Positions 3,012 to 39,895 of a stretch of DNA of 41,212 nt are shown piece after piece (the first letter of the stretch is position 1; every line of letters starts with the position of its first letter). Under the pieces are notes generated by a model, which saw nothing but the letters and a program-made list of their open reading frames with translations, was not told where the DNA came from and did no database searches. The stretch lies in assembly GCA_026770705.1 (NCBI GenBank), contig JANJGN010003720.1:1-41212 (forward strand), given 5' to 3'. This stretch comes from Isurus oxyrinchus. Its lineage: Eukaryota. A program made the position numbers and the translations under genes.

Positions 3012-3544
3012 GGTCTAGTACAGTTATAACTGAGACAAGGTCATCAGGCCAAGGGTAGTGATAACTGAAGCATGGTGCAGTGTAAAATAATGAAACACAA
3101 AGTGCAGTGAAATATAAGTTCAGACATGGTTGTACTACAGTACGAACTGAAAAAGGGTAATTGAAGTGTCCGCAGAAGCATGGCATAATATAGTAACAAC
3201 TGACACAAGATCTAATAATATAAACCGGCAGGGTCAGATGCAGTGATAACTGGGAAAGGACCAGTTACAGCACAAGTAGAGATATGGACGACTGCAGTAA
3301 TAGATAAGATAGGACACATTGTACTATAGTTCAACAATAGTGCAACAATAACTAAAGCAGAGTGTAGTGTAGCATTTACAGCTGCAGGTGAGGTGCAAAA
3401 TAAATTGAACCAGGGATGTATGGGGATTACTAAAATGGGGCCTTGATTGACATAAACTGAGACAAGACTTAGTGCAGTGATTACTGATACAGGGCCTGGA
3501 TTATTATCAACCGAGACAGGGTCTAATGGTACAGGGTATAGATT
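3012..3544 (+). repeat. Diverged 27/54-bp satellite units, continuous with the main array across the Penelope-like insertion
   Basis: 3455-3544 reads ataaactgagacaagacttagtgcagtgattactgatacagggcctgg, the main-array consensus. Confidence 0.85.
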
Positions 3545-10900: not shown

Positions 10901-11860
10901 GTAGAGCATAGTGCAGTGATTACTGATGGAGTCTAGATTAATAGAAACTGAAAGTGGACCAAGTGCAGTGATTACTGATACAGGGTCTTGAGATATTAAC
11001 TGAAACAAGGTCTAGTTCAGTGATTACTGATACAGGCTCCAGATTAAAAGAAACTGAGGCAGGGCCTAGTGTAGTGATTACTGACACAGGATAAAGATTA
11101 ATATAATCTGATACAGGGCCAAATGCAGCGATTACCGAAACAGGTTCTGGATTAATGGAAACTGCAGCAGAGCATTGTACAGTGATTACTGATACAGGGT
11201 CTAGATTAATAGAAACTGAGACAGGGTCCAGTGCTTGTTTACTGATACATGGTCCTGATCAATATAAACTCAGACAATGACCAGTGCAGTGATGACTGAT
11301 ACAGGGTCTAAATTGATATAAACTGAGGCAGTACATAGTGCATACAGGTCTAGGTTAGTATAATCCGGACAGGCTCTAGTGCAGTGATTACTGATACAGG
11401 ATCTTCATTGATATAAACTGAGACAGGCCCTACTGCAGTGATTACTGATATAAGGTCTAGATTGATATAGACTGTGACTGGGTCTAGTATAGTGATTACT
11501 GATATAGGGCCAAGATTAATATAAACTGAGACAGGATCTAGTGAGTCATTACTGACAAAGGGACTGTATTAATTTTTAATGAGAAAGGGTCTAGTGCACT
11601 GATTATTAATGCAGCATCTAGATTTTTATAAGCTGCGACAGGATCCAATGCAGTGATTACTGACATAGGGTTTAGATTGATATAAACTGAGGCAGTGCAT
11701 ACTGATACAAGGTATAGATTAATAGAAACTCAGACAGGGCGAAGTGCATTGATTACTGATACAGCTCTAGGTTAAGATAAACTGAGGCAGGGTGTGTGCA
11801 GTGATTACTGATGAATGATCTGCACTAATATAGTGAGACAGGGCCAAGTGCAAGAATTAC
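4920..11860 (+). repeat. Satellite array, 54-bp unit made of two related 27-bp subunits, about 125-130 units
   Basis: Consensus AGTGCAGTGATTACTGATACAGGGTCT + AGATTAATATAAACTGAGACAGGGTCT; GCAGTG recurs at 4923 and 4977 (54-bp period). Copy number is length divided by 54. Confidence 0.97.
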
Positions 11861-13565: not shown

Positions 13566-14075
13566 GCCCGGTGTCAATATTGCATTCGACCGTGACCCTG
13601 CCCGTGTTAATATTACACTAGACCCTGTCTGTGTTTGCATTATATTAGGCCCTTTCTCAGTTTATATTACGATCGGCACGTGACGCTGACTCTCTTTATG
13701 CTATACTAGACTCTGTCTGTTTGTATTGCGCTAGGCCCTCTCCTTGTTTATATCACACTCAAATGTTTCTGTTTATATTACACTCGACATGTCCCTTTTT
13801 ATATTATACTCGACCTGGTCTGTGTTTATAATACACTAGACGCTGTCTCTGTTTATATTACATTGGACCCTGCTTCTGTTTATATTACTCTAGATCCTGT
13901 CTTTGTTTCTATTAAACAAGGCCTTATCTCTTTATAGTACACTTGACATGTCTCTGTATATATTCATCTAGACCTGTCTCTGTATTGAAATAGGCGTTGC
14001 CTCAGTTCTGCGCTAAATTGCATTTAAATTCCATTAGATGCGGCCTCAGTTATTACTGCACTGCACAAGCCCAAT
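13566..14075 (-). repeat. Inverted array of the 27-bp satellite monomer
   Basis: Tandem acactagaccctgtctctgtttatatt-type units are the reverse complement of aatataaacagagacagggtctagtgt. Confidence 0.88.
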
Positions 14076-14169: not shown

Positions 14170-14975
14170 CTATTTAGATGTCGAGACTTGCACTTTGTAG
14201 GAAGAATAGAGGCATAGAGTATTTCCTAAATGGGAAGATAATTCAGAAATCTGGAGTGCAAACGGACTTTGGAGTCCTGGTCCAGGATTCTCTTAAGGTT
14301 AACTTGCAGGTTGAGTCGGTAGTTAGGAAGGCAAATGCAATGTTGGCATTTATTTCAAGAGGACTAGAATATAAAAGCAGGGATGTGCTGCTGAGGATTT
14401 ATAAGTCTCTGGTCAGACAACATTTAGAATATTGTGAGCAATTTTGGGCCCCGTATCTCAGGAAGGATGTGCTAGCCCTGGAGAGGGTCCTGAGGAGGTT
14501 CACGAGAATGATCCCAGGAATGAAAGGCTTAACATATGAGAAACGTTTGAGGACTCGGGGTCTATACTTGATGGAGTTTAGATGGATGAGGGGGGATCTG
14601 ATTGAAACTTACAGAATACTGAAAGACCTGGATAGAGTGGACATGGGGAAGATGTTTCCAGTCGTAGAAGAGACTAGGCACAGCCTCAAGGTAAAGAGAA
14701 GGCCTTTTAGAACAGAAATGAGGTGAAACTTTTTTAGCCAGAGAGTGGTGAATCTATGGAATTCATTGCCACAGAAGGCTGTGGAGGCCAGGTCTTTGAG
14801 TGTTTTTGAGGCCGAGATAGATAGGTTTTTGATTGGTAAGGGGATCAAAGGTTCCGGGGAAAAGGCAGGAAAATGGAGTTGAGAAACTTATTAGCAATGA
14901 TTGAATGGTGGAGCAGACTCGATGGACTGAATGGCCTATTTTCTGCTCCTATGTCTTTTGGTCTTATGGTCTTGT
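14170..14975 (+). mobile_element. CR1-type LINE 3' fragment (relatively well preserved)
   Basis: ORF 14178-14726: KANAMLAFISRGLEYKSRDVLLRIYKSLVRQHLEYCEQFWAPYLRKDVLALERV..RGDLIETYRIL; tail ending in tcttatgg-type repeats. Confidence 0.95.
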
Positions 14976-19989: not shown

Positions 19990-21290
19990 TGAAACTACAA
20001 AATGTTGTTTTTCAGCGAAGGCCTCGATTGCCAAACCACTGTAGCCATTGGACATCGTGGTGGTTCACGCCAACCCACAGGAGGTGTCGCCATTTTCCTC
20101 AGTCATCAGTTAGTTACATTCAGTTGTGATAATCGATATTTAGGGCCTTCACTTCAAGCATTCTGGAAGTGGAGCTTTAGGCGTCCCACTGATTATCTGC
20201 CTCCGGCTACCTCACCATACAGAAAGTCCTTGTGCATGTGACCATCTTCCATCCTATGTACGTTCCCAAGCCACCAGCACCATCTCTGTTTCATGAGCTC
20301 CACGGTCTTGGGAGCTCTGCCTTTGAGAGTACTACTGCATTTGTGACTTTACCCTGCCAGTACATACCCATAATGCGCACCAGGCAGCGAATATGGAAAT
20401 TGTGGAGCTTCATTTCTTGATAACTGTAAGTCGACCATATTTCACAGCCATAAAGCAAGGTGGTGAGAGCACAGGCCATATAAACCATCAGGTTGGCCTT
20501 AAGGGTCAGTTTGATATTATTCCAGGGGCATTTCACGAGTCAGCCAAAAGTAGCAGCTGCTTTTCCCATGCGGGTATCAAGTTCTGCAGCAAGCACCAGG
20601 CTGCCTGACACAGTGGAACCCAGTGAGGGGAACTTATTTCCATCCGGGTGTTACTTAGCGTGATCAATGGTGGAAATGCAACACTTTGTCCCATGGCCAG
20701 GCGATCCTTCATGGTTATAGTCAGGGGGAACATGTTACAGGCATGGGAGAGTCAGTTCATCAGTCTTTGTGGATGAGTTTCCGTTTTGATGACGAAGTTA
20801 TCAGCTTCGAGCAATTCTTTGATCAGGATTCAATGTGTTTTAGTCTTCGCTTTCAGTCTTCTAGATTGTGGGGCTTGCAGTCTGACTGGGTGTGTGAGTA
20901 GACTCCTTCCATATCTACAGAGAAGGCAAAGATCAGCAGCGTGGAGAAGAAGATGCTAAACAGAATGGGGGTTAGGACACAGGCCTGTTTCACTCTATTC
21001 TTCACTCCGAATCTGTCGGAAGTGGAATCATCAATCTGTACAGTGCAGTGCATGTTGTCACGGAAGGAGTGAATGAGACTGAGGAGCTTTGGTTGGCAGC
21101 CAATTTTCCCCAAAATCTTGAAGGGTCCTTTCCTGCTGGTGGTGTCGAGCATATGGAGCAGATCATGTCTCGAGTATATTTTCCGATGCAAACATCACAC
21201 TGTGCTTCGGCCTGCAAATAGATGAAGTCTTTAAAGTATGACCTGAGCAAAGGCCTTCCCTGTGACTCTGAGTGAGATATTCCTGTAGTT
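19990..21290 (-). mobile_element. RTE-clade LINE, decayed RT and C-terminal region
   Basis: Minus ORFs: KILGKIGCQPKLLSLIHSF.DNM..SDRFGVKNRVKQACVLTPILFSIFF (RT), and KLTLK..LMVYMACALTTLLYGCEIW..KLHNFHIRCL.RIMG..WQGKVTN.VL, typical of the RTE/BovB C-terminus. Confidence 0.9.
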
Positions 21291-21380: not shown

Positions 21381-21690
21381 GAGAAAGATACATAATTATA
21401 TAGACCAATTATTATCAATTTACGAAGGTAAATAATTATATTCACAAATTACCATCAATTCACAAAGATAAATAATTAGATTCACCAATTGGCATCAATT
21501 CACAAAGATAAATAATTATATTCACAAATTATTATTCATTCACAAAGGTAAATAATTATATTCACCAACTATCATCAATTCACAAAGATAAATAATTATA
21601 TTCACCAATTATAATCAACTCACAAAGATAAATAATTATATTCATTAATCATCATCCATTCACAAAGATAAATGATTGCATTAACCAATT
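21381..21690. repeat. 40-bp AT-rich minisatellite, about 7.5 copies
   Basis: Unit cacaaagataaataattatattcaccaattatcatcaatt starts at 21461, 21501, 21541, 21581, 21621 and 21661, with diverged copies at 21381 and 21421. Confidence 0.95.
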
Positions 21691-22556
21691 ATTTTCAGTA
21701 TTTTATTACATATAAAATATAATTGCGGTTCATGTAATATCATTAACATTGATTGAGATCGCATTGACCCTTCTGTCAACAAGGAATCACATCTGTCCCA
21801 GAATTGAGTGGGAAATGGAATGAAATCAGACCGAGGGTAATGAACAGCTACCCAGCAGCCTCTGCGATTTATTGACAAGTAATCACCTCATCATCACAGA
21901 GAAAGTCCTGATAGAAAACTGGAGCGTGTGAGGATTTGTAAAGTGATGGTATGAAAAATGCTACCTGGACCTGACTTTACTTGATAAATATTTAAATCCA
22001 GATTTGTTATTTCCATCGTCTGGAAGGTAATGAAACATTTGCGGCCCTCCATTGAGTTTCACATTATTTCTGTTTCCATAGTAATAGTGTTTAGTTTGTT
22101 ACATTCATTAATTTGGGTGAGGATATGTTGATTGTTTTGTTGTGCATGAAAGGACCACATGTTCCAAATATTACAATCCTCCACCCTAATCTGTATTATA
22201 TATCCGCTTTCTGTGTTAAAGATGATGATTGCCCATCAGCAGGGAAGAATCACCAGTGTCGGAGGGACATCTCCAGCCTTCTCTTGGTGACGTTCAGCTC
22301 GTTAGTTCCCGATAGGCAGGGGATGGAATTCATCCAGAAAATCTGGAAGGACTGAAGATATTAGACTGACACAAATTAAATACAAGACCAGCTTCAAGAT
22401 ATGAAGTGGTCAAGCACAAAGATGAGAAAGTAGGACAACATCTTTCAGACGCATCGATGGATACATCAATCAATGTATTCATTGATTCCTTCATGAAAAT
22501 ATTCAGGCGTCCAACCACCATTCATTCCTGTATCACCGCAGTCATCCCTCCATTTT

Positions 22557-24846: not shown

Positions 24847-24892
24847 ATGAGGTCGGCGATTTCTCTCAGTTTGTTGCTGACTTTCTTATCCC
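24847..24892 (+). CDS. IGHV: IgH leader exon (MRSAISLSLLLTFLS); alternative in-frame ATG at 24835
   Basis: Hydrophobic signal peptide ending at phase-1 donor C|gtgagt (24893); 130-bp intron to acceptor ttttacag (25022). Confidence 0.95.
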
Positions 24893-25022
24893 GTGAGTAG
24901 TTTTAATTGTCCAAGTCTCTCACTGTTACTGTCTCAGTGTTAATCTCTCTCTTTGGAATGTTACAGAGTCAGGAATCATTTCACCAGGATTAATCCTCTG
25001 GGTTTTTGATATATTTTTACAG

Positions 25023-25327
25023 GTGTCCAGTCGGAGGTTGTGTTGACTCAGCCAGAGGCAGAGACCGGGCGTCCCGGAGGCTCCCTGAGACTGACCTGTG
25101 AAACCAGCGGCTTCGATCTTGGCAGTGCTTACATGAGCTGGGTCCGACAGGTTCCCGGACAGGGGTTGGAGTGGCTGGTTAGCTACTATAGTTCATACAG
25201 CAACGACTACGCCCCAGGAATTAAGGATCGATTTACTGCGTCCAAAGACACTTCAAGAAACATCTTCTCCTTGGACATGACGAGCCTGAAGACTGAAGAC
25301 ACCGCCATCTATTACTGTGCAAGAGAC
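25023..25327 (+). CDS. IGHV: Ig heavy-chain V segment, germline, open frame
   Basis: (R)[69 protein letters not shown]; canonical Cys, Trp and YYC; shark-type VH framework. Confidence 0.98.
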
Positions 25328-25736: not shown

Positions 25737-25815
25737 AGTTTTTGTGTGGATGTATTTCACTGTGATACTACGGGGGTCACAGTGCTGTGCACAGCGACAT
25801 CCTCGTACAAAAACC
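25737..25815 (+). other. IGHD: DH1 segment (ATACTACGGGGGT, 25765-25777) with 5' 12-RSS and 3' 22-RSS
   Basis: AGTTTTTGT-12bp-CACTGTG [13-bp D] CACAGTG-22bp-ACAAAAACC. All three frames are stop-free (ILRG / YYGG / TTG). Confidence 0.96.
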
Positions 25816-26126: not shown

Positions 26127-26195
26127 AGTATTTGACATGGTGTGTCTCACTGTGATATACTGGGTGGCACAGCAGTTACTGTCAATACAAAAACC
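26127..26195 (+). other. IGHD: DH2 segment (ATATACTGGGTGG, 26155-26167) with 12-RSS on both sides
   Basis: AGTATTTGA-12bp-CACTGTG [13-bp D] CACAGCA-12bp-ACAAAAACC. All three frames are stop-free (IYWV / YTGW / ILG). Confidence 0.95.
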
Positions 26196-26524: not shown

Positions 26525-26563
26525 AGTTATTGTATGGCACAGCCCAGGGAATGTAACACTGTG
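26525..26563 (-). other. J 5' recombination signal (23-RSS)
   Basis: AGTTATTGT (26525-26533) + 23 bp + CACTGTG (26557-26563). Confidence 0.93.
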
Positions 26564-26611
26564 ATGCTATGGAAGACTGGGGACAAGGGACCATGGTGAC
26601 GGTGACTGCAG
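26564..26611 (+). CDS. IGHJ: Ig heavy-chain J segment (AMEDWGQGTMVTVTA)
   Basis: WGQG motif, phase-1 donor G|gtaag at 26612, preceded by a 23-RSS. Confidence 0.97.
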
Positions 26612-29600
26612 GTAAGAACCACACATTTATTTAGTAACTGTTTTATTTGAGTCTTTGCTTTTTTGTCTATTTTAATAATTCATTTAGCCAATGAAAACTG
26701 GGTTTGGTGGATTCTGTATGCAGAATTTTTTACAATGTTTCATGTGATTCTGCTGAAATTGAGTTATATAATTCCGCTGTGTCTTGATAAAATGGTGCTG
26801 CTGAGGGATTGAGACCCTGGTCGTTGTGATTTGGTGTTTATCTGCTGAGGATACTATGTGGCCTGGCTCCTTGAAATATCTAACCTTTGTAAAAACCGTT
26901 TGACGTTTCTGCAATGTTTAATCTCGGTGACATCTAATGGCTGCGGGTTTTACCATCTGTTGCACAAGAGTTTAAATAGATTTGAAATCAAACCATATTA
27001 ACAAAATATGCTTAAGTTTCAGTATTAATTTATTGAACATGTTCTGCCTACTCACAATGCTGTTGACATTATTCCATATTTCTGTTTAGTTTAATTATTC
27101 ATTCATTTGGTGATGAGCGGGTTGACTGGATTCGATATTGAGATTTTCTTGCAACGTTGCATTGGATTCTGTTGGAAGTGTTTGTATAATTGAGCTGCTT
27201 CTCCATGAAATGGGTTTCAGACCCTCAGTGATGTGATTTGGTGTTTTTCTGCTGAGGAGGTTGTGTGTCTGGGTGACTTTGAATAAGTAGAATTTGTGAA
27301 ACGGTTTGGCGGTTCTGCATTGTTTCTGCTTTGTTTAAACTCGGTGATATTGAGCGGTTACACGTTTTGCGATTGAATCTGCTTGAAGCGCGATTGTCGG
27401 CAGAAAACAAACAGGCTTCAGAAATGGGCAAAAAAGCATTTACAGATGTGTTAGAACATTTTGTCTTTATTTTAAGTGATAATTGCAGAATAAACTAAAC
27501 CATGGATTATGACGCTCATTCAGAACTTAATTCCTTACTGCGATCAGAAACTATACAATTACCAAGTTTTCAAGTTGTAGAGTAAAATTAATACAATTCA
27601 AACAATTACAATGTGTTAATATTTCTCCATATTGACGGAACAGCTTTCATATTAACCTAATTGATCATTAATCGCCTTTCACAACTCTGCTGTGCTCTGC
27701 GCACAATTAACATGATCGGGAAAGTTTTTAGGATAGAAACATTTTGTGATTATGCATGAAAAGTTTCAGTAAGAATATACTGACTCTATAGAATTGTTCA
27801 GTTTCAAAAGAGATTTTGAATTACTTTTTTATATCCCTGATAACATTTGCATTGACTTAAAGAGGAGTTTGATATTGCAGTTTGGCAATATGTCTATTCG
27901 GTTATTACATTCTTTCTGTGCAGCCGTAACCATATTATTCCTTCAATGTCATTGGGATTTGGATAGCGAGATAATTGTCACTAATCTAATTTTAAATAGT
28001 TTACTGGGGGTAATTCGCTGGCAGTAAAGGAATTGTTCTTACATTTTTTTGAACTGAAGGAAGGTGCAGACCGCATATAAATAGAGACTGACAAGTAAAA
28101 GCTTGAAATTCGAACAGATTAATTTAATTGCAAATATTTGAACTTAATAACAACATCCTGTCTCCCGTAGCTGTGTTGTACACGGGATAGAATTATAGGA
28201 GAAGAACAGATTACATCTGAGATTCATGCTTAATTCTTATTAAATATTAAATTGAAGAACAAAATCTGGAATCAATTTGCCGGTTATATTTCAGTGGCGC
28301 AGATGATCTGAATGAATTATTCTCATCAAATTTTTTACTGATCAATTTGGATCTTCTTTCAGTGAACAATATATTTAACAATTAAATTATAGGGATTGTT
28401 ATCTAGGAAGCACTTTCATTGATAATCAGTAACTGCCAGGAACATTTGTTTACGTATAGCTTGGAGTTAAGGCAAATTTGATTCAGCAAACTGATGATAT
28501 TATACCTCATCGACAGTTAATGCAAAGTGTTTCAAATATTGAACTCATAAATTCGTCGTGTGAATTACTCGATGAGAATAGATGGAATTTATGATTTCTC
28601 AATGCGTTCAGAAACGCATAGTTTACAATTTTGTCCATTAAAACAGAGCAGGAGAAGTAAAAATAAAATAGTAAATATTGATCAGATTTAAGTAAAATTG
28701 ATATATTTGCCTGAATGTTACCATCTAGTACTTTGAAGTATATTGTTCAACATTGTTTCAGTGTCAGGTTGATTTAAATAAGCCCCAATTATTTCACAAA
28801 GTACCAGGGAGGAACAAATTTTCACTTATTGAAAACTATTTTTATTATAAAGTAGAAATCAGCTAACAAGAAAATGAATTGATAATAACAAGATAATTAA
28901 CTTACAATATAATATTTATGGTAATTAATTCAACATAAATGAACTCCAACAATTAAATAGTACACTGGACATTATAGTGAATGCAAAATCTCAAAGGGTG
29001 GAGAGAATTTTGAATTGTATCCAAAATGAATTCAGAAAAGAATACTTTTCTTATTCAGCTGTGCTCACCTCGATAAGGTGTTTTGCCTCGATGTTTTTAT
29101 TGGTTATATTTATACCTAAAATCAAATCAAATCAGTGGGTAATCGGTTTTCAATGTGAATGTTTCCTGATTTGTTTAATTCTCACCCTGTCATTGAGTCT
29201 TTGTTACGGACAACCAGTTATCCTGAATCTGTAGTATTTGTGTGCTCATTTTCAGGGTAACTTAAATCGTACATTGTTTGGAGATTTGAGTCAGAAAGAG
29301 AATTAGATAGACTTCAAAGGGAGTTTTGAAATGAAAATCATTTTTTATTTCAAAGAAGTCATAGAATAATTGTAGCAAATTGACCAATTAGAATCAAACA
29401 GCTTGAATGAAATGGACAGATTGAACAGATCTATCTGCTGGGAACTCGATTGTTGCACCATTTGTGTCTGTTCTGTTTCTGTGAGCGTGGTCACTGTGCT
29501 GGGACCAGGAATCTTCCTGGCTGGTTGTTAACCTTCTGGTTCGCTCTCCTGTATTTCAGGAAGTGCAGTTTGATTTATTTCCTCACAAAACTTGTATTTG

Positions 29601-29869
29601 TGAGAAATGTGAATGTCTGATTTTTTGACCAAGCGGCTCAGAAATGAGATGCCCAACCTATTCTGACAGTCAGAAAGGACAATTCAGAAATGACAGACAG
29701 ACTGTCGAAGGAGATTTGGTCGATTTAAGCCAGTGATGTACCTGTCTTGGGAGTGTTCGGCTAGGCAATGCAGAGAGTTTTATTCTTTTTTAATCCGTGC
29801 TGTAGCAGTCCTTGACCTATTTGGTTGGACAATGCGGAGGAAGAAATTAGTCTGTATCTTATTTTTAAT

Positions 29870-30435
29870 CCTATCATAGAATGTTGGGGTTGCTGGCAAG
29901 GCCAGCATTTGTTGCCCATCCTAACTGCCCATCCTTGAGGGAGTGTTGAAATGCCGCGTCCTTGAATAGCCGCAGGTTCACTCACAGTTCTGTTAGGTCA
30001 GGAGTTCCAGGATTTTGACCCATTGAAAGTGAAGGAATGGCGATATAGTTCCAAGTCAAGATGTTCATTGTCTTGGAGGGAACATACAGGTGTTTCCAAG
30101 CACCTGCTGCCCTTGTCCTTCTAGTTAGGAGAGGTTGCGGGTTTTGAAGGAGCCTTGGCGAGTTGCTGCATTGAATCTTGTATATGGTACACACTGATGT
30201 CACTGTGCGTCGGTGGGGGAGGGAGTGAAAGTTTAACGTAGTGGATGGGGGTACCAATTCTGTGGGCTGCTTTGTCCTGGATAGTATCAAGTTTCTTGGG
30301 GTTGTTTGAAGTTTCACACATCGAGGCAAGTGGAAGTCCTTACTTGTGCCTTGTAGATGGCCAGTTTTCTTTGGGCGATAGGTGTTGAATTCCTCACCAC
30401 AGAATTCCCAGCCTCTGACCGGCTCCTGCAGCACA
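29870..30435 (-). mobile_element. LINE 3' end (same family as 15275-17712; shares its tail with the SINE)
   Basis: Minus strand reads KKLDTIQDKAAHRIG / HSLPHRRTV.SVCTIYK..CSNSPRLL, matching 17490-17710; its tail matches the SINE tail at 22870-22925. Confidence 0.8.
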
Positions 30436-31209
30436 GCACTTATATCAAAACCGGATTGAACCCTCTCCTGGGCATATTTGATGGAACAATGTAGAGAGTT
30501 TTATTTTATTTCAAACCAGTGCTGTACCTGACCCAGAGTGTTTGACAATTCAGTGGAGAGTTGGCTTTCTGTTGAATCCCACCCTTGCAGCTGATGACAG
30601 GAGTGTACTGGAGGAGGAGTGGGGGCTTTAATCCATGTCTTAACTTGTCCTGTTCCTTACCTGAGAGTCTTTTCCCTGCAGAGGTCAAACAAACTGGATG
30701 AGCATCGAACGAACTGGCTGTGGGTTCTCGAGCCAGATCTGTGAAAATAAATTGTTCCATTGCTCAGTTTAAATGACGCACGTTAATTGTTTTTAACAAT
30801 ATTTCTGCAGAGAACATGTATAAATTTTAATGAATTAATTATGTTTAAGCATTTTGAGTATCAGAAAATCATTGAATGTGAGTGACCTGAACTTGAGCAC
30901 AATTTCAGATCAAACAGAATCAGGGAGTGATAGTGAGGCTCCAGAGAGCAGCACCTGTTCTGATCTGATCAGAGGCTGCGAGTTATTTAAATGACTGAAA
31001 TGGACAATGACTAGACTCCCGCTCCAAATAACCAGCCACGGGGGATTTGGGGAAAAGGAGCCGCCATCAAAAACTGAGCCATTGGATTGCCCCCTGCAGG
31101 GGGTGGAATGAATGACAGAAATAAGAGCATGAGGAGGACATTCGGCTCTTCGATCCTGCCCTCCATTCAGTAAGATCATGGTTCATCTACCTCGACACTC
31201 AGTCTCTTT

Positions 31210-31948
31210 ACCACACACCCTCACTTGCTCACTCTCTCTGTCACACACGCTCTCTCTCTCACACATGCACACACTCTCTCACGCACTCTCTCTGACAGAC
31301 ATACACTCTCTCTTTCTCTCTCTGTCACACACACACATTCTCTCTCTGTCACACAAACTCCCTTTAACACGCACACACTCTGTCTCTCACACATTGCCTC
31401 TCTCTTTCACACACACTCTCACACAGACACCCACATTCTCTCATACACATACTCTCTCAACTGTGCACACACATACACACTCTCTTCCTCACACATACAT
31501 GCACTCTGTCTTCTTCACACATGCACTCTCACACATGCATTCTCTCTCTCACATATGCGCACACACCCTCTCTGTTATGCACACCCACTCTCTCTCTCTC
31601 TCACATACATCCACCCTCTCTCCCAAACACATACATTCTCTCAAATCTCACCCTCCCTCACACACAGACACATAACACTCTCTCTCACACACACATCCTC
31701 ATTCTCTCTCTCTCATGCACACAGAAACACAAACACATTCCCTCTCTCGCACATCGACACTGTTCCTCTCACACACAGACTCTCTCATTCTCTCCCTCTC
31801 ACAGTCTTTCTCTCTCTCTCTGACCCACACACTGGCTCTCTCTTTCACACACTCTTTCTCTCCCACACACAGTCTCTCTCTCTCACACTTATACTACCTA
31901 TCACTCACACCCCTACACACACTCTCTCACACACACATACACACACAG

Positions 31949-31988
<40 letters not shown>

Positions 31989-32078
31989 ATGCTCTCTCTC
32001 TGACACACATTTCTCTATGTCAGACACTCTCACACTTATACTCCCTATGACACTCTCCTTCTCTCATACACACTCACA

Positions 32079-32116
<38 letters not shown>

Positions 32117-32190
32117 TTGTCTGTCTGTCTGTGTCTCTCTCTTTCTCTCTCTTTCACATGCACACACACACACATATTCTCAAACACAGA
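31210..32190. repeat. Compound (CA)n/(CT)n low-complexity tract
   Basis: Direct reading; source of the H/T/L/S-rich ORFs at 31178-32262. Confidence 0.95.
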
Positions 32191-32751
32191 AATGGACTGA
32201 AAATGCTAACTTCAGAAAGAAAATCCGTTAAGCTGCAGGCATGTTCATTGTTCCATTTCTGATGTCTTTTTGTGTAAAATGAAATTACACACGTGACATC
32301 ACTATATATGTGGAGAATTTCCAAGTGTTGAACCAAACACAAAGAAACAAGAAAAAGGGAGGAATGTGATGGAGACCACGGCCGCCTGGATCCCCAATAC
32401 TGGTGCACACTTGGTGCAAGATGCCTGCATGGCCCTTCCTGGTTTTGCTGTAACCTTCCCCTCCAGCCCCCTCAGTCTGCCTATTCGCACACTGACACGG
32501 GTTTCTCAAAGAAAGGAATTGGCAGCTGGTCAGCGATCTACACTGCTGCCTGACTTTACACAGCCGGTGTTACTGAAAGCTGATCAATATGGAGAATCGG
32601 GACAGGGTCGATGGAGGGGAAGAGGAGGAGGTGGAGATGGAGGTGGAGCCGAATGGAGGAGCCCCCAGCTCGGTTGTGGACAACAGGCAATGGAAAGCTG
32701 AGCCAGAGCAGAAAATCATCTGGAAAAACATCACCATGATGAGCACCTGGG

Positions 32752-33345
32752 CACCCTCACTACCCACAATCACTCACCCTCACTCACCCTCACTCACTCA
32801 CTCACCCTCACTACCCACAATCACTCACCCTCATACCATCACTCACTCACCCTCACTCACTCAATCACCTTCACTCACCCACCCTCACTCATGCATCCTC
32901 ACTCACGCACCCTCACTCACGCACCCTCACTCACGCACCCTCACTCACACTCACCCACCCTCACTCACTCACCCTCACTCACTCACCCTCACTCACACTC
33001 ACTCACAGTCACTCAATCACCCAGCTTCACTCACCCTTATTCACTCACCATTAATTACTTTAACCTTCAATCACTCACCCTCACACACTCACCCTCACTC
33101 ACCCTCCCATCCTCACTCACCTACCTTCACTGACACTCAATAACTCATCTACGTGCCCTCACATACCCACTCACCCTCACTCACATACCTACCCTCACAT
33201 ACTACCAACCCTCACTCAGCCACTCGACTACCCTCATTCAATCACCCACCCTCACTCACCAACATTCAGACACCCACCCACGCCCATTCACCACCCACCC
33301 TCACTCACTCAGCCACCCTCACTTTGTCAAACATGCACATGCTCA
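32752..33345. repeat. C/A-rich tandem tract (CACT / CACCCT units)
   Basis: Repeated cactcaccctcactcact with very few G on the + strand. Confidence 0.93.
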
Positions 33346-33374
33346 CTCATTCGATCACTTTTCATAAATCGGTG

Positions 33375-35022
33375 TGTGGGAGGGCGGGAACTGCGGGGAA
33401 GTGAGACCTGGAAGCGAGGTCTGAGGCCTAGCAGTGCCAGAAAGTGGAGCATGGCTGAAGGGAGTGACGCTCTTGGTTGGAAAGTGCAGGGAGGCAGTGG
33501 GGGTAAAGCTCGGAGAGCCTGGGGAAAGGGCAGGGAGGCGGGGAAAATAGCAGAGAGCCGGGGGGCGGGGGAGGTGGGGGTGTTGGGGGGCAAGGGTAGA
33601 GAGTCGGGGAAAAGAGCAGGGATCCAGCGGAAAGTGCTTTGGGATGGGGCAAAGGTCAGCAAGCAGGGGGAAAGGTCAGCAAGCCAGTGAAAGGGCAGAG
33701 AGGCGGGGGAGGAAGAAGGGCAGAGAGACGATGGAAAGAGCAGAGAGGTGGGGGGGAAGGGCAGAGAGATGGAGGGAAGGGCATAGAGGCGGGAGGGGGA
33801 AAGGGCAGAGAGGCAGAAGGAGGAAAGGGCAGAGAGGCGGGAGGGGGAAAGGGCAGAGAGGCAGAAAGAGGAAAGGGCAGAGAGGCGGGAGGGGGAAAGG
33901 GCAGAGAGGCGGGAGGGAGAAAGGGCGGAGAGGTGGGGAGAAAGTGCTCAGAGGTGTGAGGGGAAAAGAGCAGAGAGGCAGTAGGGGGAAAGGGCAGAGA
34001 GGCAGTAGGGGGAAAGGGAAGAGAGGTGGGAGGAGGAAAGGGCAGAGAGGCAGGAGGGCAGAGAAGCGGGGTGTGGGATGGGCAGAGAGGCAATGGAAAT
34101 GGCAGAGAGGCGACCGAAAGATCAGCATGCTGGGGAACGGGCAGAGAGCTAATGGGAAAGGTCAGAGAGCCGGGCGAAAGCACAGAGAGCCGTGGAGGTA
34201 ATGCAGAGAGCTGGGTGAGAAAAGGCAGAGAGGCGTGGGGGGGAGTGCAGAGAGGCAGGAGATGGAAAGGGCAGAGAGGCGGGAGGGCAAAGAGGCGGAG
34301 GGGTGACAGGGGAGAGAAGTGGAGAGTGGGACAGGCAGAGAGGCGAGGGGAAATGGCAGAGAGGTGGCAGGAGGAAAGGGCAGGAATGTAGGTGGGGGAA
34401 AGGGCAGAGAGGCGGTGGGGGAAAGGGCAGAGAGGAGGGTGGGCAGAGAGGCAGAGGAGGGAAGGGCAGAGAGGAGGGTGGGCACAGAGGTAGAGGGGGG
34501 AAGGGCAGAGAGGCGAGGGAAAGGGCAGTGAGCTGGAGTAAGGGCAGAGAGGCGGGAGGGTGTAAGGGCAGAGAGGCGGGAGGGGGAAAGGGCAGAGAGG
34601 AGGGAGGGGGAAAGGGCAGAGAGGCGATTGAAAGGGCAGGGAGCCAGGGGAACGGGAAAAGAGCAGTGGAAAAGGTCAGAGAGCTGGGTGAAAGCACAGA
34701 GCACAGTGGAATGTGCGCAGAGACCTGGGGGAGAAAGGGCAGAGAGGTGATGGAGAAAGGGCAGAGAGGCGGCGGATGTAAAGGGCTGAGAGGCGGGAGT
34801 GGGAATGGGCAGAGAGGCGGGAGGGGGAAAGGGCAAAGATGCAGGAGGGGAACAGGGCAGAGAGGCATGTGGGAAAGGGCAGAGAGGAGGGGGGAAAGGG
34901 CACAGGGGAGGGAGGGGGAAAGGGCAAAGATGCAGGAGGGGAACAGGGCAGAGAGGCATGTGGGAAAGGGCAGAGAGGAGGGGGGAAAGGGCACAGGGGA
35001 GGGAGGGGGAAAGGGGCAGAAA
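33375..35022 (+). repeat. Purine/G-rich tandem repeat, 24-bp core unit AAAGGGCAGAGAGGCGGGAGGGGG
   Basis: GGGC(A/G)GAGAGG recurs at 33803, 33827, 33851, 33875, 33899 and 33923 (24-bp period) and degenerately through 35020; the last ~180 bp is a near-perfect 91-bp duplication (34831 vs 34922). Confidence 0.95.
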
Positions 35023-35712
35023 GTTACAATACAGGAACAGCAAGTGATGAGGAAGGCAAAGGGAGTGTTGGCATTTATTATAAGGGGAATAGATTATAAA
35101 TGGAAGGATATTTTACTATAGTTTAACAGGGTGGCGATGAGACCTCGTCTGAATTACTGTGTACAGATTTGGTCTCACTTAAGAAAGGATTTAAAAGCAT
35201 TAGAAGTTGTTCAGAGAATGTTCATTCAAATGATACTGGGGTTGTCATCGGTTATCTTATGAGGAAAGTTTGGATAGGCTGGGCCTGTATCCACTGAAGT
35301 TTAGAAGAATGAGAGCTGAATTTATTGAAACATATAAGATCTTGAGGGAAATTAACAGGGTGGATGCTGAAAGGATGTTTCCCCTTGTGAGAGAGACTAA
35401 CGAAAGAGAACACATTTTAAAAATAAGAGGTCTCCCATTTCAGACGGAAATGAGAGTATTTTATTTTCTCTCAAAGGGTTGTGAAACTTTGGAACTCTTC
35501 CATAGACAGCAATGGAGGAGGAGTCATTAATATTTCAAGGCAGAGGTAGAGAGATTCTTCATTGACAAGGGAGTCAAAGGTTAGCGGAGAGCAGACGGGA
35601 ATGTGGAGTTAACGCCACAATCAGATTATCTATGATCGGAGTGAATGGTGGAGGAGGCTAGAGAGGCCAAATGGCCTACTCCTGCTACTAATCCACATGT
35701 TCATATGTACAT
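35023..35712 (+). mobile_element. CR1-type LINE 3' fragment
   Basis: QQVMRKAKGVLAFIIRGIDYK and DRLGLYPLKFRRMRAEFIETYKILR; CR1-like tail aatggcctactcctgct. Confidence 0.9.
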
Positions 35713-36263
35713 ACGATTGGAAAATGTCGTACTAACTGTCACTAGTATTCAAGTTAGGGTTCTAAGGTCATTATATAGGTACCATTACAAAGGTACTTTC
35801 AAAGGGTGATTGCTGTTCTTTGTTTTGGGGGGACATGGAGAGGGGAGGGGGCATCAGTCAATTTCAACAGAGCCAATTTCCAAACTGCAATGATATAAAT
35901 GACAAGACAATTTCTCTATCACCAAGTGCTGTTAATTGAGAAATAAACAATGGCAGAAATAATGGGTAAAATCCTCAGCTCTTCCATTTTAATCCAATGA
36001 AAGGTACGTCATTCAGATGACATCAAAATGTTCTATTTTAGTAATGGGATAGAGGCGGAGAAAGAGGTGTGGGTTTCTAAAGAGGGAACCGACAGATGAG
36101 GGTCACCAAATAATGGAAATAATAAATGATCAAATATGGATGTGGGTTTCAATTGGAATATATTTGGATATGTTTATAGTTATAGTCAAATTTTGAGTTG
36201 TTTGGTTAATTAATGATCACAAATCACAGAGTCTAACTTGTTCAATTGGCCATTCTTTCCCAG

Positions 36264-36563
36264 TGACACCGTCTTCGCCCACTCTCTACAGCCTGGTCTC
36301 CTCCTGTCAGCAACACAACCCCGACGGCTCCATCACCTACGGCTGCTTGGCGATGGATTACTCCCCAGAAATCACCAGCCTGACCTGGAAGAAAGATGGG
36401 CAGGAGATCACCACTGGATTTAAGACTTACCCGTCAGTGAGGAACCAGAAGGGAACCTACACCATGAGCAGCCAGTTAACCATCACCGAGTCAGAGGGAG
36501 AATGCAGCAAAATCAAGTGTGAGGTTCGACACAGCGTCTCAAACAAGAGCATTGGAATGCCAT
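36264..36563 (+). CDS. IGHM: IgM constant exon Cmu1
   Basis: Acceptor ttcccag|, (V)[49 protein letters not shown], phase-1 donor T|gtaagt; in frame with JH. Confidence 0.96.
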
Positions 36564-36759
36564 GTAAGTGTTGGGGAACCTGTGAGAAACAGAAAGGCTG
36601 TGATTGACCTGTATAGGGCCTTGGTTATAACGCATTTATAGTGCTCTGCATAGTTCTGATCCTGGAAATTCCAGGTAGTGTCCATTGTTAAAATATAAGA
36701 ACTATTGTATCTGTTATCAATTTCTTCTGCAAGAAATGTTTAACCTGTGTTTTTTGAAG

Positions 36760-37068
36760 GTCCTGACTTACCTCCAACTGTTCTCCTCACCGTGAGTTCC
36801 CGGGAAGAAATCACAACCAACAAATTTGCAACCGCCGTCTGTTCAATCATCGATCTCCGTTCAAAGTCAATCACCGTGAAGTGGCTGAAGAATGGACAAC
36901 CCATGAATTCAGGAATTATCACCTCTCCCATCTTTGAAGTGAATGGGAACTTCTCGGCGACCAGTTTGCTGAAAGTCTCCACTGGGGAATGGTTCAGTAA
37001 CTCGGTCTATACCTGTCAGGTCACTCACCAAGGGGTCACCCAAAGTCGAGATGCCACCAAGTGTGATG
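36760..37068 (+). CDS. IGHM: IgM constant exon Cmu2
   Basis: Acceptor tttgaag|, (C)[42 protein letters not shown], donor G|gtaag. Confidence 0.95.
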
Positions 37069-37404
37069 GTAAGAAATACAAACCGAGGAAGGAATAGATC
37101 ATTCTGCTCTCTGATGTTAGTCAAATCAGGAATTTATTGGAGTTAGTACAAGCACAGAAGAATTTCTTATTTATTCTCATGTAGTTGTTATTTAATTCCA
37201 ATGTAAGTGCTACATTCAGATTGTTCACCATTCAGGATTTTATCACATCACGTCTCTACATTGACGTCATAGAGTGTGTGAGGTGGACTTGATATCAACT
37301 TTACCCTGAGACAGCTGATCATATTTGGAGAGGCAGAAGGTGCCTGGAACCCTTCACTGGTAACAGCTTCAGGATGGAGTGTTGGAAAGTGCATCCACCC
37401 TATT

Positions 37405-37600
37405 TATAAAACAGCTTTCAGTACTGCATTCCAGGGCCCAGGAATGATACATTTGTATTGGGATTGGGGCAACGCAGATTCATGAGAATGTTACCGGGGC
37501 TGAAGGACTTAAATTATGGGAATGATTTACACAGACCAAGCTGGTTTTCCATTGTGTAAAGAAGATTAAAGACGATAGTTAGAGGTTGATATGTCCAAGG
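37405..37600 (+). mobile_element. Highly decayed CR1 fragment in the Cmu2-Cmu3 intron
   Basis: gcaacgcagattcatgagaatgttaccggggctgaagg (QRRFMRMLPGLK) motif. Confidence 0.65.
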
Positions 37601-37691
37601 TGATTTATTCTCCTTTAGGGAGTGAAGGCTGAATACTACTGTGCTGATTCTGAAGGTGAAAGTTTGATTGATTTTCATTTCTGTCTCACAG

Positions 37692-37997
37692 GTGATGACC
37701 ACTGCCCCAACAATCCCACAATACTGCCACCTCCAGTAGAACAGGTCTTACTGGAGGCAACCGTGACCTTAACCTGCATCGTATCCAATGCTCCTTATGG
37801 AGTCCTCGTGAGCTGGACACAAGAAAAGAAGCCTTTGAAATCAGAGATCGCCGTCCAACCGGGAGAGGATCCCAACAGCGTGGTCAGCAACGTAAACATC
37901 TCGACACAAGCCTGGCTGAGTGGGGCTGAGTTCAACTGCGTGGTGAGCCATCAGGATCTGCCGACTCCTTTAAGAAGTTCCATCCACAAGGAATCAG
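37692..37997 (+). CDS. IGHM: IgM constant exon Cmu3
   Basis: Acceptor ctcacag|, (G)[58 protein letters not shown], donor G|gtgag. Confidence 0.96.
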
Positions 37998-38389
37998 GTG
38001 AGCGGTGAGATTGAAGCAATAAGTAGTTCAACGTGTCTATTTCCAGTGTAAGTGTCAGGATCAATATTTACTATTCAGTGTATTCATGGTCTACTCTGAT
38101 TAGCAATTTCGTCAACTAAACGGTCTGGGCCTGTGGACTTTCAGGGGGAAATTGATAAGTAGATGAATGAACAATGAATTGAAGGCTGTGCCATTGGGTT
38201 TAGATGAAGCAAGATGGGAGGAGCCTGGTGTGAAGCTGAAACACCAACATGGACCAGTTGGGCAGAATGGCCTGTTTCTGTGCTGTAAACTTTGAGAAAC
38301 TTTCTCGTCCAACCCCATAGGTTCTCAGGGAAAAGGATTGTGCCACCTCTGCTCCAAGCTGGAAAGCCGGACAGATCCCAAAGTATTTT

Positions 38390-38590
38390 ATTTACTAATT
38401 CATGGGATGTGGGCGTTGCTGGCTGGGCCAGAGTTATTGCCCATCCCTAACTGCCCTTGACAAGGTGTTGGTGAGCTGCCTTCTTGAACCGCTGCAGTCC
38501 ATGTGGTGTAGATACACCCACAGTGCTGTTAGGGAGGGAGTTCCAGGATTTTGATTCAGCTATAGTGAAGGATCGGTGATATATTTCCAA
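38390..38590 (-). mobile_element. LINE/SINE shared 3' tail fragment in the Cmu3-Cmu4 intron
   Basis: catgggatgtgggcgttgctggctgggccag..ttgcccatccctaactgcccttga..gagttccaggattttga, homologous to 29880-30055. Confidence 0.8.
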
Positions 38591-38711
38591 GAAGTGGATA
38601 ATGAAAAACCTTAATATTCATCACAAAACACATTTCTCTCACATCTAACCAGCGGTTTCATTGTCTACGAAAGTATCCAGTTTATTGACGTTTATTGTAC
38701 ATTTTCTGCAG

Positions 38712-39103
38712 TTAAAGACCCGCGGGAACCGTCCGTGTCTGTCCTCCTGCCCTCGGCAGAAGATGTCTCCGCTCAGAGGTTCGTCTCCCTCAGCTGCTTA
38801 GTGAGAGGTTTCTCCCCGCGAGAGATTTTCGTCAAGTGGACCGTCAATGACAAGCCGGTGAATCCCGGAAACTACAAGAACACCGAGGTAGTGGCGGAGA
38901 ATGGCAATCGCTCCTTCTTCATGTACAGCCTGTTATCCATTGCAGCGGAGGAGTGGGCCAGCGGAGCTTCTTACTCCTGTGTGGTGGGACATGAAGCGAT
39001 CCCCTTGAAGATCATCAACAGAACGGTTGATAAATCCAGCGGTAAACCGAGTTTCGTGAACATTTCCCTTGCACTGATGGACACCGTTAATTCATGTCAA
39101 TGA
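38712..39103 (+). CDS. IGHM: IgM constant exon Cmu4 + secretory tailpiece
   Basis: Acceptor ttctgcag|, (V)[75 protein letters not shown]; tailpiece has an N-glycan sequon and a penultimate Cys. Confidence 0.98.
39039..39047 (+). other. Internal Cmu4 splice donor for the membrane form (G|gtaaac at 39041/39042)
   Basis: Donor at the S-G-K junction, the conserved position used to splice to TM exons in IgM. Confidence 0.8.
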
Positions 39104-39146: not shown

Positions 39147-39544
39147 GTCCTTTTCTCTAATCGTGATTTAAATACACAATCGTTTAATCAACGTTGTTTT
39201 CTACTTTTGCTGATGTTAGACCTGTTTAGTTAAAATCGGATATTTACAGGGCTCACACCCAAGTCTTGTATACCCAGTGCTCCCAGCTCAGATACACCCT
39301 GGGTTAGAGACAGAGTAAAGCTCATTCATTACGGGATTCTGCAAAATAACTTCACCAACTTCCCTCCCACTGAGGTGAAATCTGACAATTCCCATTTCAG
39401 ACAAACAAACACAGCACATTTAGATCTGGGTGTTCCTGCTTCTCTTATTGTCCATTCCTTTAAAATGGATGTCACCTTTAAGCTGCTGCACCACACCCAC
39501 TGGGAACTGAAGTGGATTCACACAGAAACATGTCCCAACAATCC

Positions 39545-39895
39545 CCCATCAGGGAGAGAGGGAAGGGAAATTATTAACCCAATGTACCCCCTCTTCCCCA
39601 ACAGAGAGAGGGGGGAAGGGGACATTGTTAACCCATTGCACCTCCACTTCCACAACAGTGGGTGGGGGGGGGGCGAATTGTTTAGCCACTTTACCCCACT
39701 TTCCCAACAGAGAGAGGGGAAGGGAAATTGGTAACCCACTGTGCCTCCACTTCCCCAACAGAGAAAACTGAAAGGAAAATTTTAAGCCAATTTTACCTCC
39801 ACTTGCTAAACAGAAAGACGAGGAAGGTCATTGATTAACCCGGTGTGTCTCCACCTTCTCAGCAGAGAGAACCAAAAGGGAAATTGCTTAGACAA
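39545..39895. repeat. ~52-bp diverged tandem repeat, about 7 copies
   Basis: Unit aacagagagaggggaagggaaattgttaacccactgtacctccacttcccc. Confidence 0.85.

What the first reader, a model, noticed from the sequence alone, without database searches (positions are those of the whole stretch)
33375..35022. Switch-region-like G-rich tandem repeat upstream of Cmu1 in a shark-type IgM cluster
Seen: about 1.6 kb, G-rich on the non-template strand, with a 24-bp unit (AAAGGGCAGAGAGGCGGGAGGGGG), multiple G3-G6 runs, one or two GGCA (RGYW/AID hotspot) motifs in most units and a few GAGCT(GGG) pentamers (about 34146, 34209, 34530, 34681). It ends 1.24 kb before Cmu1 and shows recent internal duplication (91 bp). 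Known: mammalian S regions are repetitive, G-rich on the non-template strand, form R-loops and G4 and lie in this position; sharks are described as lacking S regions yet switch VDJ between clusters through J-C intron junctions. Inference: a proto-S region or independently evolved recombination target for inter-cluster switching. Caveats: palindromic AGCT/WGCW density is low, and purine-rich repeats occur elsewhere in shark genomes.
Basis: partly seen in the sequence, partly recalled or inferred. Interest (0 to 1): 0.8.

Follow-up and report, generated by a model that had tools for sequence, protein, structure and literature searches.

The report
G-rich minisatellite in shark IgM intron
A 1.6-kb run of G-rich 24-letter repeats sits in the long intron of a shark IgM antibody gene where mammals keep their class-switch region, and it has that region's strand bias but not its enzyme-target motifs, so it is most likely an ordinary inherited repeat array that could at most act as a passive break-prone zone.

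Summary
Window 33375-35022 is a tandem array of about 68 units (consensus AAAGGGCAGAGAGGCGGGAGGGGG). It is 52% G and 83% purine, with GC skew +0.67. It lies in the 9.65-kb JH-Cmu1 intron of a complete VH-D1-D2-JH-Cmu1-4 cluster, G-rich on the non-template strand, and ends 1,242 nt before Cmu1.

By sequence it is the one strongly R-loop- and G4-prone piece of the window: 86 of 96 G-cluster starts fall in it, and every 100-nt window is at least 40% G.

It fails the motif test shared by frog and mammalian switch regions:
- AGCT: 5 observed, 5.1 expected.
- WGCW and non-template WRC are depleted.
- Hotspots summed over both strands are fewer than in the rest of the intron.
- 54% of template-strand Cs are in cold-spot context.

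It starts 6.8 kb after JH, abuts a C-rich array of opposite polarity, and abuts a LINE fragment.

The unit occurs nowhere else in the window, and public contigs show no genome-wide amplification.

This scan has flagged the same kind of tract before, in at least 10 other IgM clusters of this genome. Those notes are unchecked; two follow-ups reached the same verdict.

Best reading: a G-rich minisatellite inherited with the cluster (0.6). A true recombination target remains possible (about 0.2).

The parts
33375..33688 (+). Degenerate 5' part of the G-rich tract (about 20-nt units, G-runs up to 6)
   Evidence: (period-20 rows at 33513-33698). Contigs of two other organisms align here at about 85-90% (records 14, 26, 27).
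33689..35020 (+). Core array of 24-nt units, consensus AAAGGGCAGAGAGGCGGGAGGGGG. The 12-nt core GGGCAGAGAGGC is conserved and the G-rich tail is variable. A 48-nt higher-order period is also present.
   Evidence: period 24, 56.5 copies, 66% matches; period 48.
34780..35015 (+). Recent internal duplication: 91-nt block, 2.6 copies, 93% matches
31000..33330 (+). Upstream CT/CA and CTCACTCACCC arrays, C-rich on the non-template strand (38% C, GC skew -0.54). Their polarity is opposite to the tract, and they abut it with a spacer of about 50 nt.
   Evidence: Very high summed contig depth, so these are common genome-wide. No inverted-repeat relation to the tract.
35028..35710 (+). 5'-truncated 3' part of a LINE (non-LTR retrotransposon), directly after the tract. 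Boundaries are approximate.
   Evidence: ORF 35270-35530 is 53% identical to the tail of ORF 14178-14726. A related copy at 1339-2063(-) carries RVT_1. This stretch has the highest summed contig depth of the region laid.
25022..25327 (+). VH exon (V-set), followed by heptamer CACAGCG. The leader exon lies at about 24847-24893.
   Evidence: V-set E 3e-18.
25765..25777 (+). D1, flanked by heptamers at 25758-25764 and 25778-25784
26155..26167 (+). D2, flanked by heptamers at 26148-26154 and 26168-26174
26564..26611 (+). JH (heptamer 26557-26563; GTAAGA donor at 26612). The JH-Cmu1 intron is 26612-36263.
36264..36563 (+). Cmu1 exon (C1-set)
   Evidence: C1-set E 2e-14. Closest named relatives are Mustelus asterias at 80% and Scyliorhinus torazame at 72-83%.
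36747..39103 (+). Cmu2, Cmu3 and Cmu4 with the secretory tail, inside ORFs 36747-37097, 37622-38008 and 38735-39103. Exact splice sites were not determined.
   Evidence: C1-set E 9e-16, 5e-9, 5e-21.

Best explanation
The tract is a G-rich, purine-strand-asymmetric minisatellite in the JH-Cmu1 intron. It grew and is kept homogeneous by slippage or unequal exchange, and it is inherited along with the IgM cluster when clusters duplicate.

What the sequence shows: when a rearranged cluster is transcribed, this is the stretch of the transcription unit most likely to form an R-loop and G-quadruplexes in the displaced DNA strand and in the intron RNA. Its 83%-purine RNA would pair with a pyrimidine-rich template.

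What is inferred: it is not tuned as a substrate for the deaminase AID. It has no excess of AGCT/WGCW, few WRC motifs on the displaced strand, and mostly cold-spot Cs on the template strand. Any part it plays in shark inter-cluster switching would therefore be that of a passive fragile or single-stranded zone, not a selected switch region.
For: - Array structure: degenerate units (66% matches), variable unit length of 16-25 nt, a 48-nt higher-order period and a recent 91-nt duplication. These are the marks of minisatellite turnover.
- AID motifs in the tract against 500 dinucleotide shuffles: AGCT 5 vs 5.1; WGCW 27 vs 41.8; top-strand WRC 44 vs 65.4; GYW 103 vs 100.4.
- WRC on both strands per 500 nt: 44-45 in the tract against 47-66 in the 5' intron.
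- Template-strand Cs: 54% are in SYC cold-spot context and 12% in WRC.
- The mammalian S pentamers cover 6% of the tract. The mouse Sgamma3 consensus printed in PMC2442634 carries 2 AGCT per 49 nt, about 41/kb, against 3.0/kb here.
- Setting: it is flanked by an opposite-polarity C-rich array and a LINE fragment, so the intron is a general repeat sink.
- Distance: it lies 6.76 kb downstream of JH.
- CpG observed/expected is 0.44, so it is not a CpG island or promoter-like.
- Contigs of a run guessed to be RNA cover the Cmu exons but not the tract.
- R-loop and G4 proneness: 86 of 96 G3N1-10G3N1-10G3 starts of the window; at least 40% G in every 100-nt window; mean G4Hunter score 1.19; RNA G4 in the minimum-free-energy fold of 13 of 15 windows against 1 of 43 in the 5' intron.
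- Two earlier follow-ups on sister clusters reached the same verdict (AI notes, not independent evidence).
Against: - Position, polarity, length and G density match mammalian S regions. A 1.6-kb tract with 52% G on the non-template strand would form R-loops whether or not it was selected for that.
- Scan notes, unchecked, place the same tract in the same position and orientation in at least 10 other IgM clusters.
- Contigs of two other organisms align to its less repetitive 5' part.
- It does not look like a genome-wide repeat.
- The field has no explanation of how sharks target switch breaks (PMC4279169, PMC4588147).
- AID preferences and the repair pathways that turn distant nicks into breaks may differ in sharks.
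Confidence: 0.6

Rival explanations
1. It is a true recombination target, either a proto-S region or a convergent one. Transcription from the rearranged VDJ promoter would form a stable R-loop or G4 over the tract. The displaced strand, or G4 intron RNA, would recruit AID or other nucleases. The resulting breaks would be joined to breaks in the J-C intron of another cluster.
For: Right intron, right strand, tandem structure, 1.6 kb, 52% G, dense G clusters and predicted G4 in DNA and RNA. One WRCY per unit on the template strand (GGCA 60 times). Not found elsewhere in the window or as a high-copy repeat. Reported in many sister clusters (unchecked). Sharks do switch through J-C introns, and no target sequence is known (PMC4279169, PMC8201067).
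Against: AGCT and WGCW, the motifs shared by Xenopus and mammalian S regions and sufficient without R-loops (PMC2442634), are at or below expectation. The displaced strand has only 10% C and is depleted in WRC. Total hotspots are fewer than in the rest of the intron. The tract lies 6.8 kb from JH, and no promoter evidence is seen upstream: the octamer occurs at chance level and none is near the tract; CpG observed/expected is 0.44. Recurrence in paralogues follows from duplication alone. The adjacent array has the opposite polarity.
Confidence: 0.2
2. It is a cis-acting RNA or transcription element unrelated to recombination. The 127 G-runs would bind G-run-binding splicing factors (hnRNP H/F type) or slow the polymerase, helping the processing of a 9.65-kb repeat-laden intron or setting expression level.
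For: G-triplet density of 77/kb, confined to the sense strand of an intron. Predicted RNA G4s. Apparent retention across clusters (unchecked).
Against: There is no direct evidence. The tract is 1.2 kb from the acceptor and 6.8 kb from the donor, far from where intronic G-runs usually act. Unit degeneracy and length variation argue against a dose-sensitive element. No Rfam family matches.
Confidence: 0.1
3. It is a tandem array carried by, or generated with, the adjacent LINE insertion or another transposable element.
For: The LINE fragment starts within about 10 nt of the array's 3' end. A small G-rich remnant lies beyond the LINE at 35826-35856.
Against: Two other copies of the same LINE family in the window (1339-2063, 14178-14726) have no such array next to them, and the unit is found nowhere else. 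Summed contig depth over the LINE is about three orders of magnitude higher than over the array (a weak measure). The layout fits better with a LINE that inserted at or near the end of a pre-existing array.
Confidence: 0.05

Closest known systems
Mammalian immunoglobulin switch regions (Smu, Sgamma)
   Same: Tandem repeats 1-10 kb long in the intron upstream of the CH1 exon. G-rich with G clusters on the non-template strand. Predicted to form R-loops and G4 (features as listed in PMC2442634 and PMC6125637).
   Different: Mammalian S units are built from GAGCT, GGGGT, GGGCT, TGGGG and AGCT. Here those pentamers cover 6% of the tract and AGCT is 3.0/kb, equal to background, against about 41/kb in the Sgamma3 consensus. 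No I-exon or germline promoter is evident. The tract is 6.8 kb from JH. No junction or mutation data exist.
Xenopus Smu
   Same: It is the pre-mammalian reference for what an early switch region looks like, and it sits in the same intron position.
   Different: Xenopus Smu is AT-rich, forms no R-loops and works through dense AGCT motifs (PMC2442634, PMC4279169). The shark tract is the reverse: G-rich, R-loop-prone and AGCT-poor.
G-rich hypervariable minisatellites of vertebrate genomes
   Same: 10-100-nt units, kilobase arrays, strong purine/G strand asymmetry, degenerate units with local higher-order duplications, and G4 potential.
   Different: The classical human core GGAGGTGGGCAGGARG (as listed in PMC9069542) is not present: only 2 hits with 3 mismatches. 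Only the GGGCAG hexamer is shared. Length polymorphism was not tested.
Predicted R-loop-forming sequences (RIZ plus REZ model)
   Same: G-cluster initiation zones followed by a long stretch of at least 40% G on the sense strand of a transcribed gene (PMC6125637).
   Different: Such sequences are common in gene bodies and mostly have no recombination role. Prediction is not detection.

Membership tests
Immunoglobulin switch (S) region | Lies in the intron between the J or I exon and the first constant exon | tested here: met
   JH ends at 26611, the tract is 33375-35022, and Cmu1 starts at 36264.
Immunoglobulin switch (S) region | Long (1-10 kb) tandemly repetitive sequence | tested here: met
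   1.65 kb, about 68 units, period 24/48.
Immunoglobulin switch (S) region | G-rich with G clusters on the non-template strand (mammalian type) | tested here: met
   52% G, GC skew +0.67, 77 G-runs per kb, no C-runs. 86 of the window's 96 G-cluster triplets lie in the tract.
Immunoglobulin switch (S) region | High density of AGCT/WGCW overlapping AID hotspots (shared by Xenopus and mammals) | tested here: not met
   AGCT 5 vs 5.1 expected. WGCW 27 vs 41.8. WRC on both strands is lower than in the rest of the intron.
Immunoglobulin switch (S) region | Units made of GAGCT, GGGGT, GGGCT and TGGGG pentamers | tested here: not met
   4, 4, 1 and 12 occurrences respectively; 6% of the tract is covered.
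Immunoglobulin switch (S) region | Germline (I-exon) promoter upstream and sterile transcription through the repeats | tested here: inconclusive
   No octamer near the tract, and the octamer count is at chance level. CpG observed/expected is 0.44. Contigs of a small run guessed to be RNA cover the Cmu exons but not 33183-34865. The tools have no eukaryotic promoter model and no raw RNA reads.
Immunoglobulin switch (S) region | Recombination junctions and AID-dependent mutations fall within it in B cells | not testable with these tools
   This needs B-cell DNA. The primary shark switching papers (PMC3360817, PMC3839419) are not held.
Immunoglobulin switch (S) region | Forms R-loops when transcribed in the physiological orientation | not testable with these tools
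   Only sequence-based prediction is possible, and it is positive.
G-rich minisatellite | Tandem array of 10-100-nt units over 0.5 kb or more, with strand-asymmetric G/purine content | tested here: met
   (83% purine).
G-rich minisatellite | Degenerate units with signs of ongoing turnover (higher-order or recent internal duplications) | tested here: met
   66% matches overall. Adjacent-unit identity is 0.77 against 0.75 for all pairs. A 91-nt block occurs 2.6 times at 93%.
G-rich minisatellite | Shares the classical hypervariable core GGAGGTGGGCAGGARG | tested here: not met
   Only 2 hits with 3 mismatches in the tract. It belongs to the general kind, not to that core family.
G-rich minisatellite | Array length varies between alleles or paralogous copies | not tested
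   Scan notes give 1.3-3.1 kb for sister clusters, but I could not read those sequences.
Transposon-borne tandem repeat | The array accompanies other copies of the element | tested here: not met
   No unit lies beside the LINE copies at 1339-2063 or 14178-14726. Contig depth over the LINE is about 1000 times that over the array (a weak measure).

The most novel reading that the evidence does not exclude
Sharks, described as lacking S regions, would carry an R-loop/G4-type switch target in every IgM cluster. Inter-cluster switch breaks would concentrate in this G-rich array and would depend on its orientation. G-rich, structure-based targeting of recombination would then either predate the AGCT-based frog type or have arisen twice.
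Probability: 0.15. Interest if true: 0.85.

Novelty: new member of a known kind. Interest (0 to 1): 0.35.

Why it matters
How sharks direct switch breaks to J-C introns without S regions is an open question. Three reviews state that no S regions or cryptic promoters are known (PMC4279169, PMC8201067, PMC4588147). This tract gives a concrete, testable candidate: it makes up 17% of the intron, so junction mapping can quickly show enrichment or none.

If it is used, it would change the accepted order of events in the evolution of class switching, in which AGCT motifs came first and G-richness and R-loops came later. If it is not used, it is a useful natural control: G-richness, polarity and position alone do not make a switch region.

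Tried and rejected
1. Fetching other clusters and species.

2. Microbial and metagenome collections. An exact 35-mer of the unit and the Cmu1 peptide gave no hits. This was expected and says nothing about sharks.

3. Primary literature. Zhu 2012, Zhu 2011 and Zhang 2013 are not held. Where nurse-shark junctions fall, and whether those introns hold similar arrays, therefore could not be checked.

4. No paper in the searched library describes a G-rich array in a shark J-C intron.

5. Inverted-repeat or hairpin relation between the C-rich and G-rich arrays: only short 72-83% matches, so rejected.

6. CpG island or promoter reading: observed/expected 0.44, so rejected.

7. Known RNA families: none.

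8. Jeffreys core membership: rejected.

9. Contig depth as copy number: the tool warns against this use. I use it only for the contrast of several orders of magnitude with the neighbouring repeats.

Full report
**Context**

The window carries a complete, unrearranged shark-type IgM minilocus on the + strand.
- A leader exon lies at about 24847-24893.
- The VH exon is 25022-25327 (Pfam V-set, E 3e-18).
- D1 is 25765-25777 and D2 is 26155-26167, each flanked by heptamers.
- JH is 26564-26611, with a GTAAGA donor.
- Four C1-set exons follow: Cmu1 at 36264-36563, then exons inside ORFs 36747-37097, 37622-38008 and 38735-39103. The last ends in an IgM-type secretory tail.

The JH-Cmu1 intron is therefore 26612-36263, 9.65 kb. 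The closest named relatives of the Cmu1 ORF are Mustelus asterias (80%) and Scyliorhinus torazame (72-83%), so the genome is that of a carcharhiniform-like shark.

**The observation**

It is correct in every descriptive point.
- Tandem Repeats Finder gives 33689-35020 with period 24 (56.5 copies, 66% matches) and period 48. It also gives a 91-nt block repeated 2.6 times at 93% at 34780-35015.
- Cutting the array at its GCA anchors gives about 68 units of 16-25 nt, with a mode of 24.
- The consensus of 33 in-register units is AAAGGGCAGAGAGGCGGGAGGGGG. The first 14 positions are 79-100% conserved (positions 2-7 are invariant) and the G-rich tail is variable.
- The whole tract 33375-35022 is 52.2% G, 30.8% A, 10.3% C and 6.7% T. 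GC skew is +0.67. There are 77 G-runs of 3 or more per kb and no C-run.
- The 24-mer (up to 3 mismatches, 20 hits) and its 12-nt core (up to 1 mismatch, 37 hits) occur only inside the tract and only on the + strand. Shuffles give 0-0.2.
- The tract ends 1,242 nt before Cmu1 and begins 6.76 kb after JH.

**What the sequence predicts physically**

The tract is the only part of the 41-kb window with strong R-loop and G-quadruplex potential.
- 86 of the window's 96 G3-N1-10-G3-N1-10-G3 starts lie in it.
- Every 100-nt window has at least 40% G. This is the layout of G-cluster initiation zones plus a G-rich elongation zone described in PMC6125637.
- Mean G4Hunter score is 1.19, and 26% of 25-nt windows score 1.5 or more, against 0.1% elsewhere.
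- There are 21 relaxed-loop (1-12) and 6 strict-loop (1-7) quadruplex motifs, all on the + strand.
- With RNA parameters and quadruplexes allowed, 13 of 15 150-nt windows have a G4 in the minimum-energy fold, against 1 of 43 in the 5' intron.

The transcript would be 83% purine. From established knowledge, purine-rich RNA on a pyrimidine-rich DNA template favours stable hybrids. All of this is prediction; nothing was measured.

**The test the tract fails**

[quoted passage not shown] It also reports that Xenopus Smu, which is AT-rich and forms no R-loops, still supports switching through its AGCT-rich part. The AGCT/WGCW motif is thus the feature shared across tetrapods.

Here:
- AGCT occurs 5 times against 5.1 expected from 500 dinucleotide shuffles.
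- WGCW occurs 27 times against 41.8, and every shuffle has at least as many.
- WRC on the non-template strand occurs 44 times against 65.4.
- GYW (WRC on the template strand) occurs 103 times against 100.4.
- GGCA is enriched (60 vs 37) only because it is part of the unit.
- Summed over both strands, WRC sites number 44-45 per 500 nt in the tract against 47-66 in the 5' intron, so the tract is hotspot-poor for its intron.
- Of the 861 template-strand Cs, 54% are in the SYC cold-spot context and 12% in WRC. The displaced strand has only 169 Cs.
- The four mammalian pentamers cover 6% of the tract.
- The Sgamma3 consensus printed in PMC2442634 holds two AGCT per 49 nt by inspection, about 41/kb, against 3.0/kb here and 2.5/kb in the whole window.
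- No other part of the intron is AGCT- or WGCW-rich either.

**Surroundings**

Directly upstream, 31000-33330 is a set of CT/CA and CTCACTCACCC arrays that are C-rich on the same strand (38% C, skew -0.54). This is the opposite polarity, and about 50 nt separate the two blocks. The two blocks are not inverted copies of each other.

Directly downstream, about 35028-35710 is the 3' part of a 5'-truncated LINE. Its ORF is 53% identical to the tail of ORF 14178-14726, and a related copy at 1339-2063(-) carries a reverse-transcriptase domain. A short G-rich remnant at 35826-35856 lies beyond the LINE, which suggests the LINE landed at or near the array's end.

The intron is therefore a general sink for repeats, and the G-rich tract is one of three repeat blocks filling its 3' half. 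CpG observed/expected is 0.44, so it is not an island. The Ig octamer occurs at chance frequency and not near the tract. No Rfam family matches.

**Is it Ig-specific?**

Within the window, yes. For the genome I could use only Logan contigs. The tool warns that contig depth is not copy number, so I use only the large contrast:

| Stretch | Summed contig depth |
|---|---|
| CT/CA array, CTCACCC array, LINE | 10^4 to 7x10^5 |
| Tract core (33744-34865) | 75-340 |
| Cmu1/Cmu2 exons | 3,500-4,100 |

This gives no sign that the unit is a high-copy genome-wide repeat. G-rich tandem DNA does assemble poorly, which weakens the point.

Contigs of two other organisms (coded B and C) align to the less repetitive 5' part of the tract: 33430-33707, 33523-33709, and 33305-33543 across the C-rich/G-rich boundary. 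Their identity is about 85-90%, similar to their identity over the unique intron before Cmu1. The layout therefore exists in relatives. Paralogous contigs of organism A itself are just as divergent, so these relatives are probably close and the comparison says little about selection.

A small run guessed to be RNA covers the Cmu exons but gives no contig over 33183-34865. This is weak negative evidence for a stable transcript.

**Earlier findings of this scan**

First-stage notes describe the same kind of G-rich tract in the JH-Cmu intron of at least ten other pieces of this genome, 1.3-3.1 kb long. One of them is also preceded by a C-rich repeat. Two were followed up, and both were judged to be inherited minisatellites lacking AID motifs.

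These are unchecked AI notes and I could not read those sequences. However, recurrence in paralogues, together with the neighbouring C-rich array, is what cluster duplication predicts without any selection.

**Literature**

Three reviews state that shark Ig loci lack S regions, and one adds that there are no cryptic promoters. They describe inter-cluster switching as AID- and hypermutation-associated, with unknown targeting (PMC4279169, PMC8201067, PMC4588147). The primary papers were not held. I could therefore not check where nurse-shark junctions fall or whether those introns hold similar arrays. Six full-text searches found no description of a G-rich array in a shark J-C intron.

**Verdict**

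The best-supported reading (0.6) is a G-rich minisatellite inherited with the cluster. It is R-loop- and G4-prone by composition but not shaped as an AID substrate, and at most it is a passive fragile zone.

The rivals are:
- A genuine recombination target (0.2). It is kept alive by position, polarity, apparent recurrence and the lack of any known shark target.
- A splicing or elongation element (0.1).
- A transposon-borne array (0.05). The absence of the unit beside other copies of the LINE argues against it.

It works like part of an S region (the R-loop half), but it is not a member of that family on the motif criterion.

**Limits**

- No B-cell DNA, raw RNA reads or eukaryotic promoter models were available.

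Noticed in passing
window 4922-11812 (and 13594-13983 in reverse orientation): A 6.9-kb minisatellite of 54-nt units (two 27-nt half-units, about 125 copies, 71% matches) lies about 13 kb upstream of the VH. A short patch of the same 27-nt unit lies in inverted orientation 1.8 kb further on.
   Followed up: no
window 31000-33330: CT/CA and CTCACTCACCC arrays, C-rich on the sense strand, directly abut the G-rich tract. GC skew flips from -0.43 to +0.69 within about 50 nt. Their summed contig depth is 100-1000 times that of the tract, so they are common repeats. A scan note reports the same C-rich-then-G-rich order in a sister cluster.
   Followed up: partly
window 35028-35710; also 1339-2063(-), 14178-14726(+), 20853-21191(-): Several fragments of one LINE family (reverse-transcriptase domain in 1605-2063). 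The one at 35028-35710 sits directly after the tract, and a G-rich remnant at 35826-35856 lies beyond it, as if the LINE had inserted near the array's end.
   Followed up: partly
protein P0001: A 132-aa 'hypothetical protein' filed under Salmonella enterica serovar Typhimurium, on a 480-nt contig, is 89% identical to this shark Cmu1 exon. It carries a C1-set domain and is almost certainly shark DNA contaminating a bacterial assembly.
   Followed up: no
window 39544-39885: A 52/103-nt tandem repeat (about 6 copies) starts 440 nt after the secretory-tail stop codon. No transmembrane exons were identified in the remaining 2 kb of the window, but they were not searched for systematically.
   Followed up: no
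window 27845-27852 (-): The only Ig octamer (ATGCAAAT) inside the J-C intron lies 1.2 kb after JH. The window holds 3 octamers in all, which is chance level, and there is no exact copy upstream of the leader.
   Followed up: no
window 21384-21692: An AT-rich 40-nt tandem repeat (7.7 copies, 83% matches) lies about 3.3 kb upstream of the VH leader.
   Followed up: no
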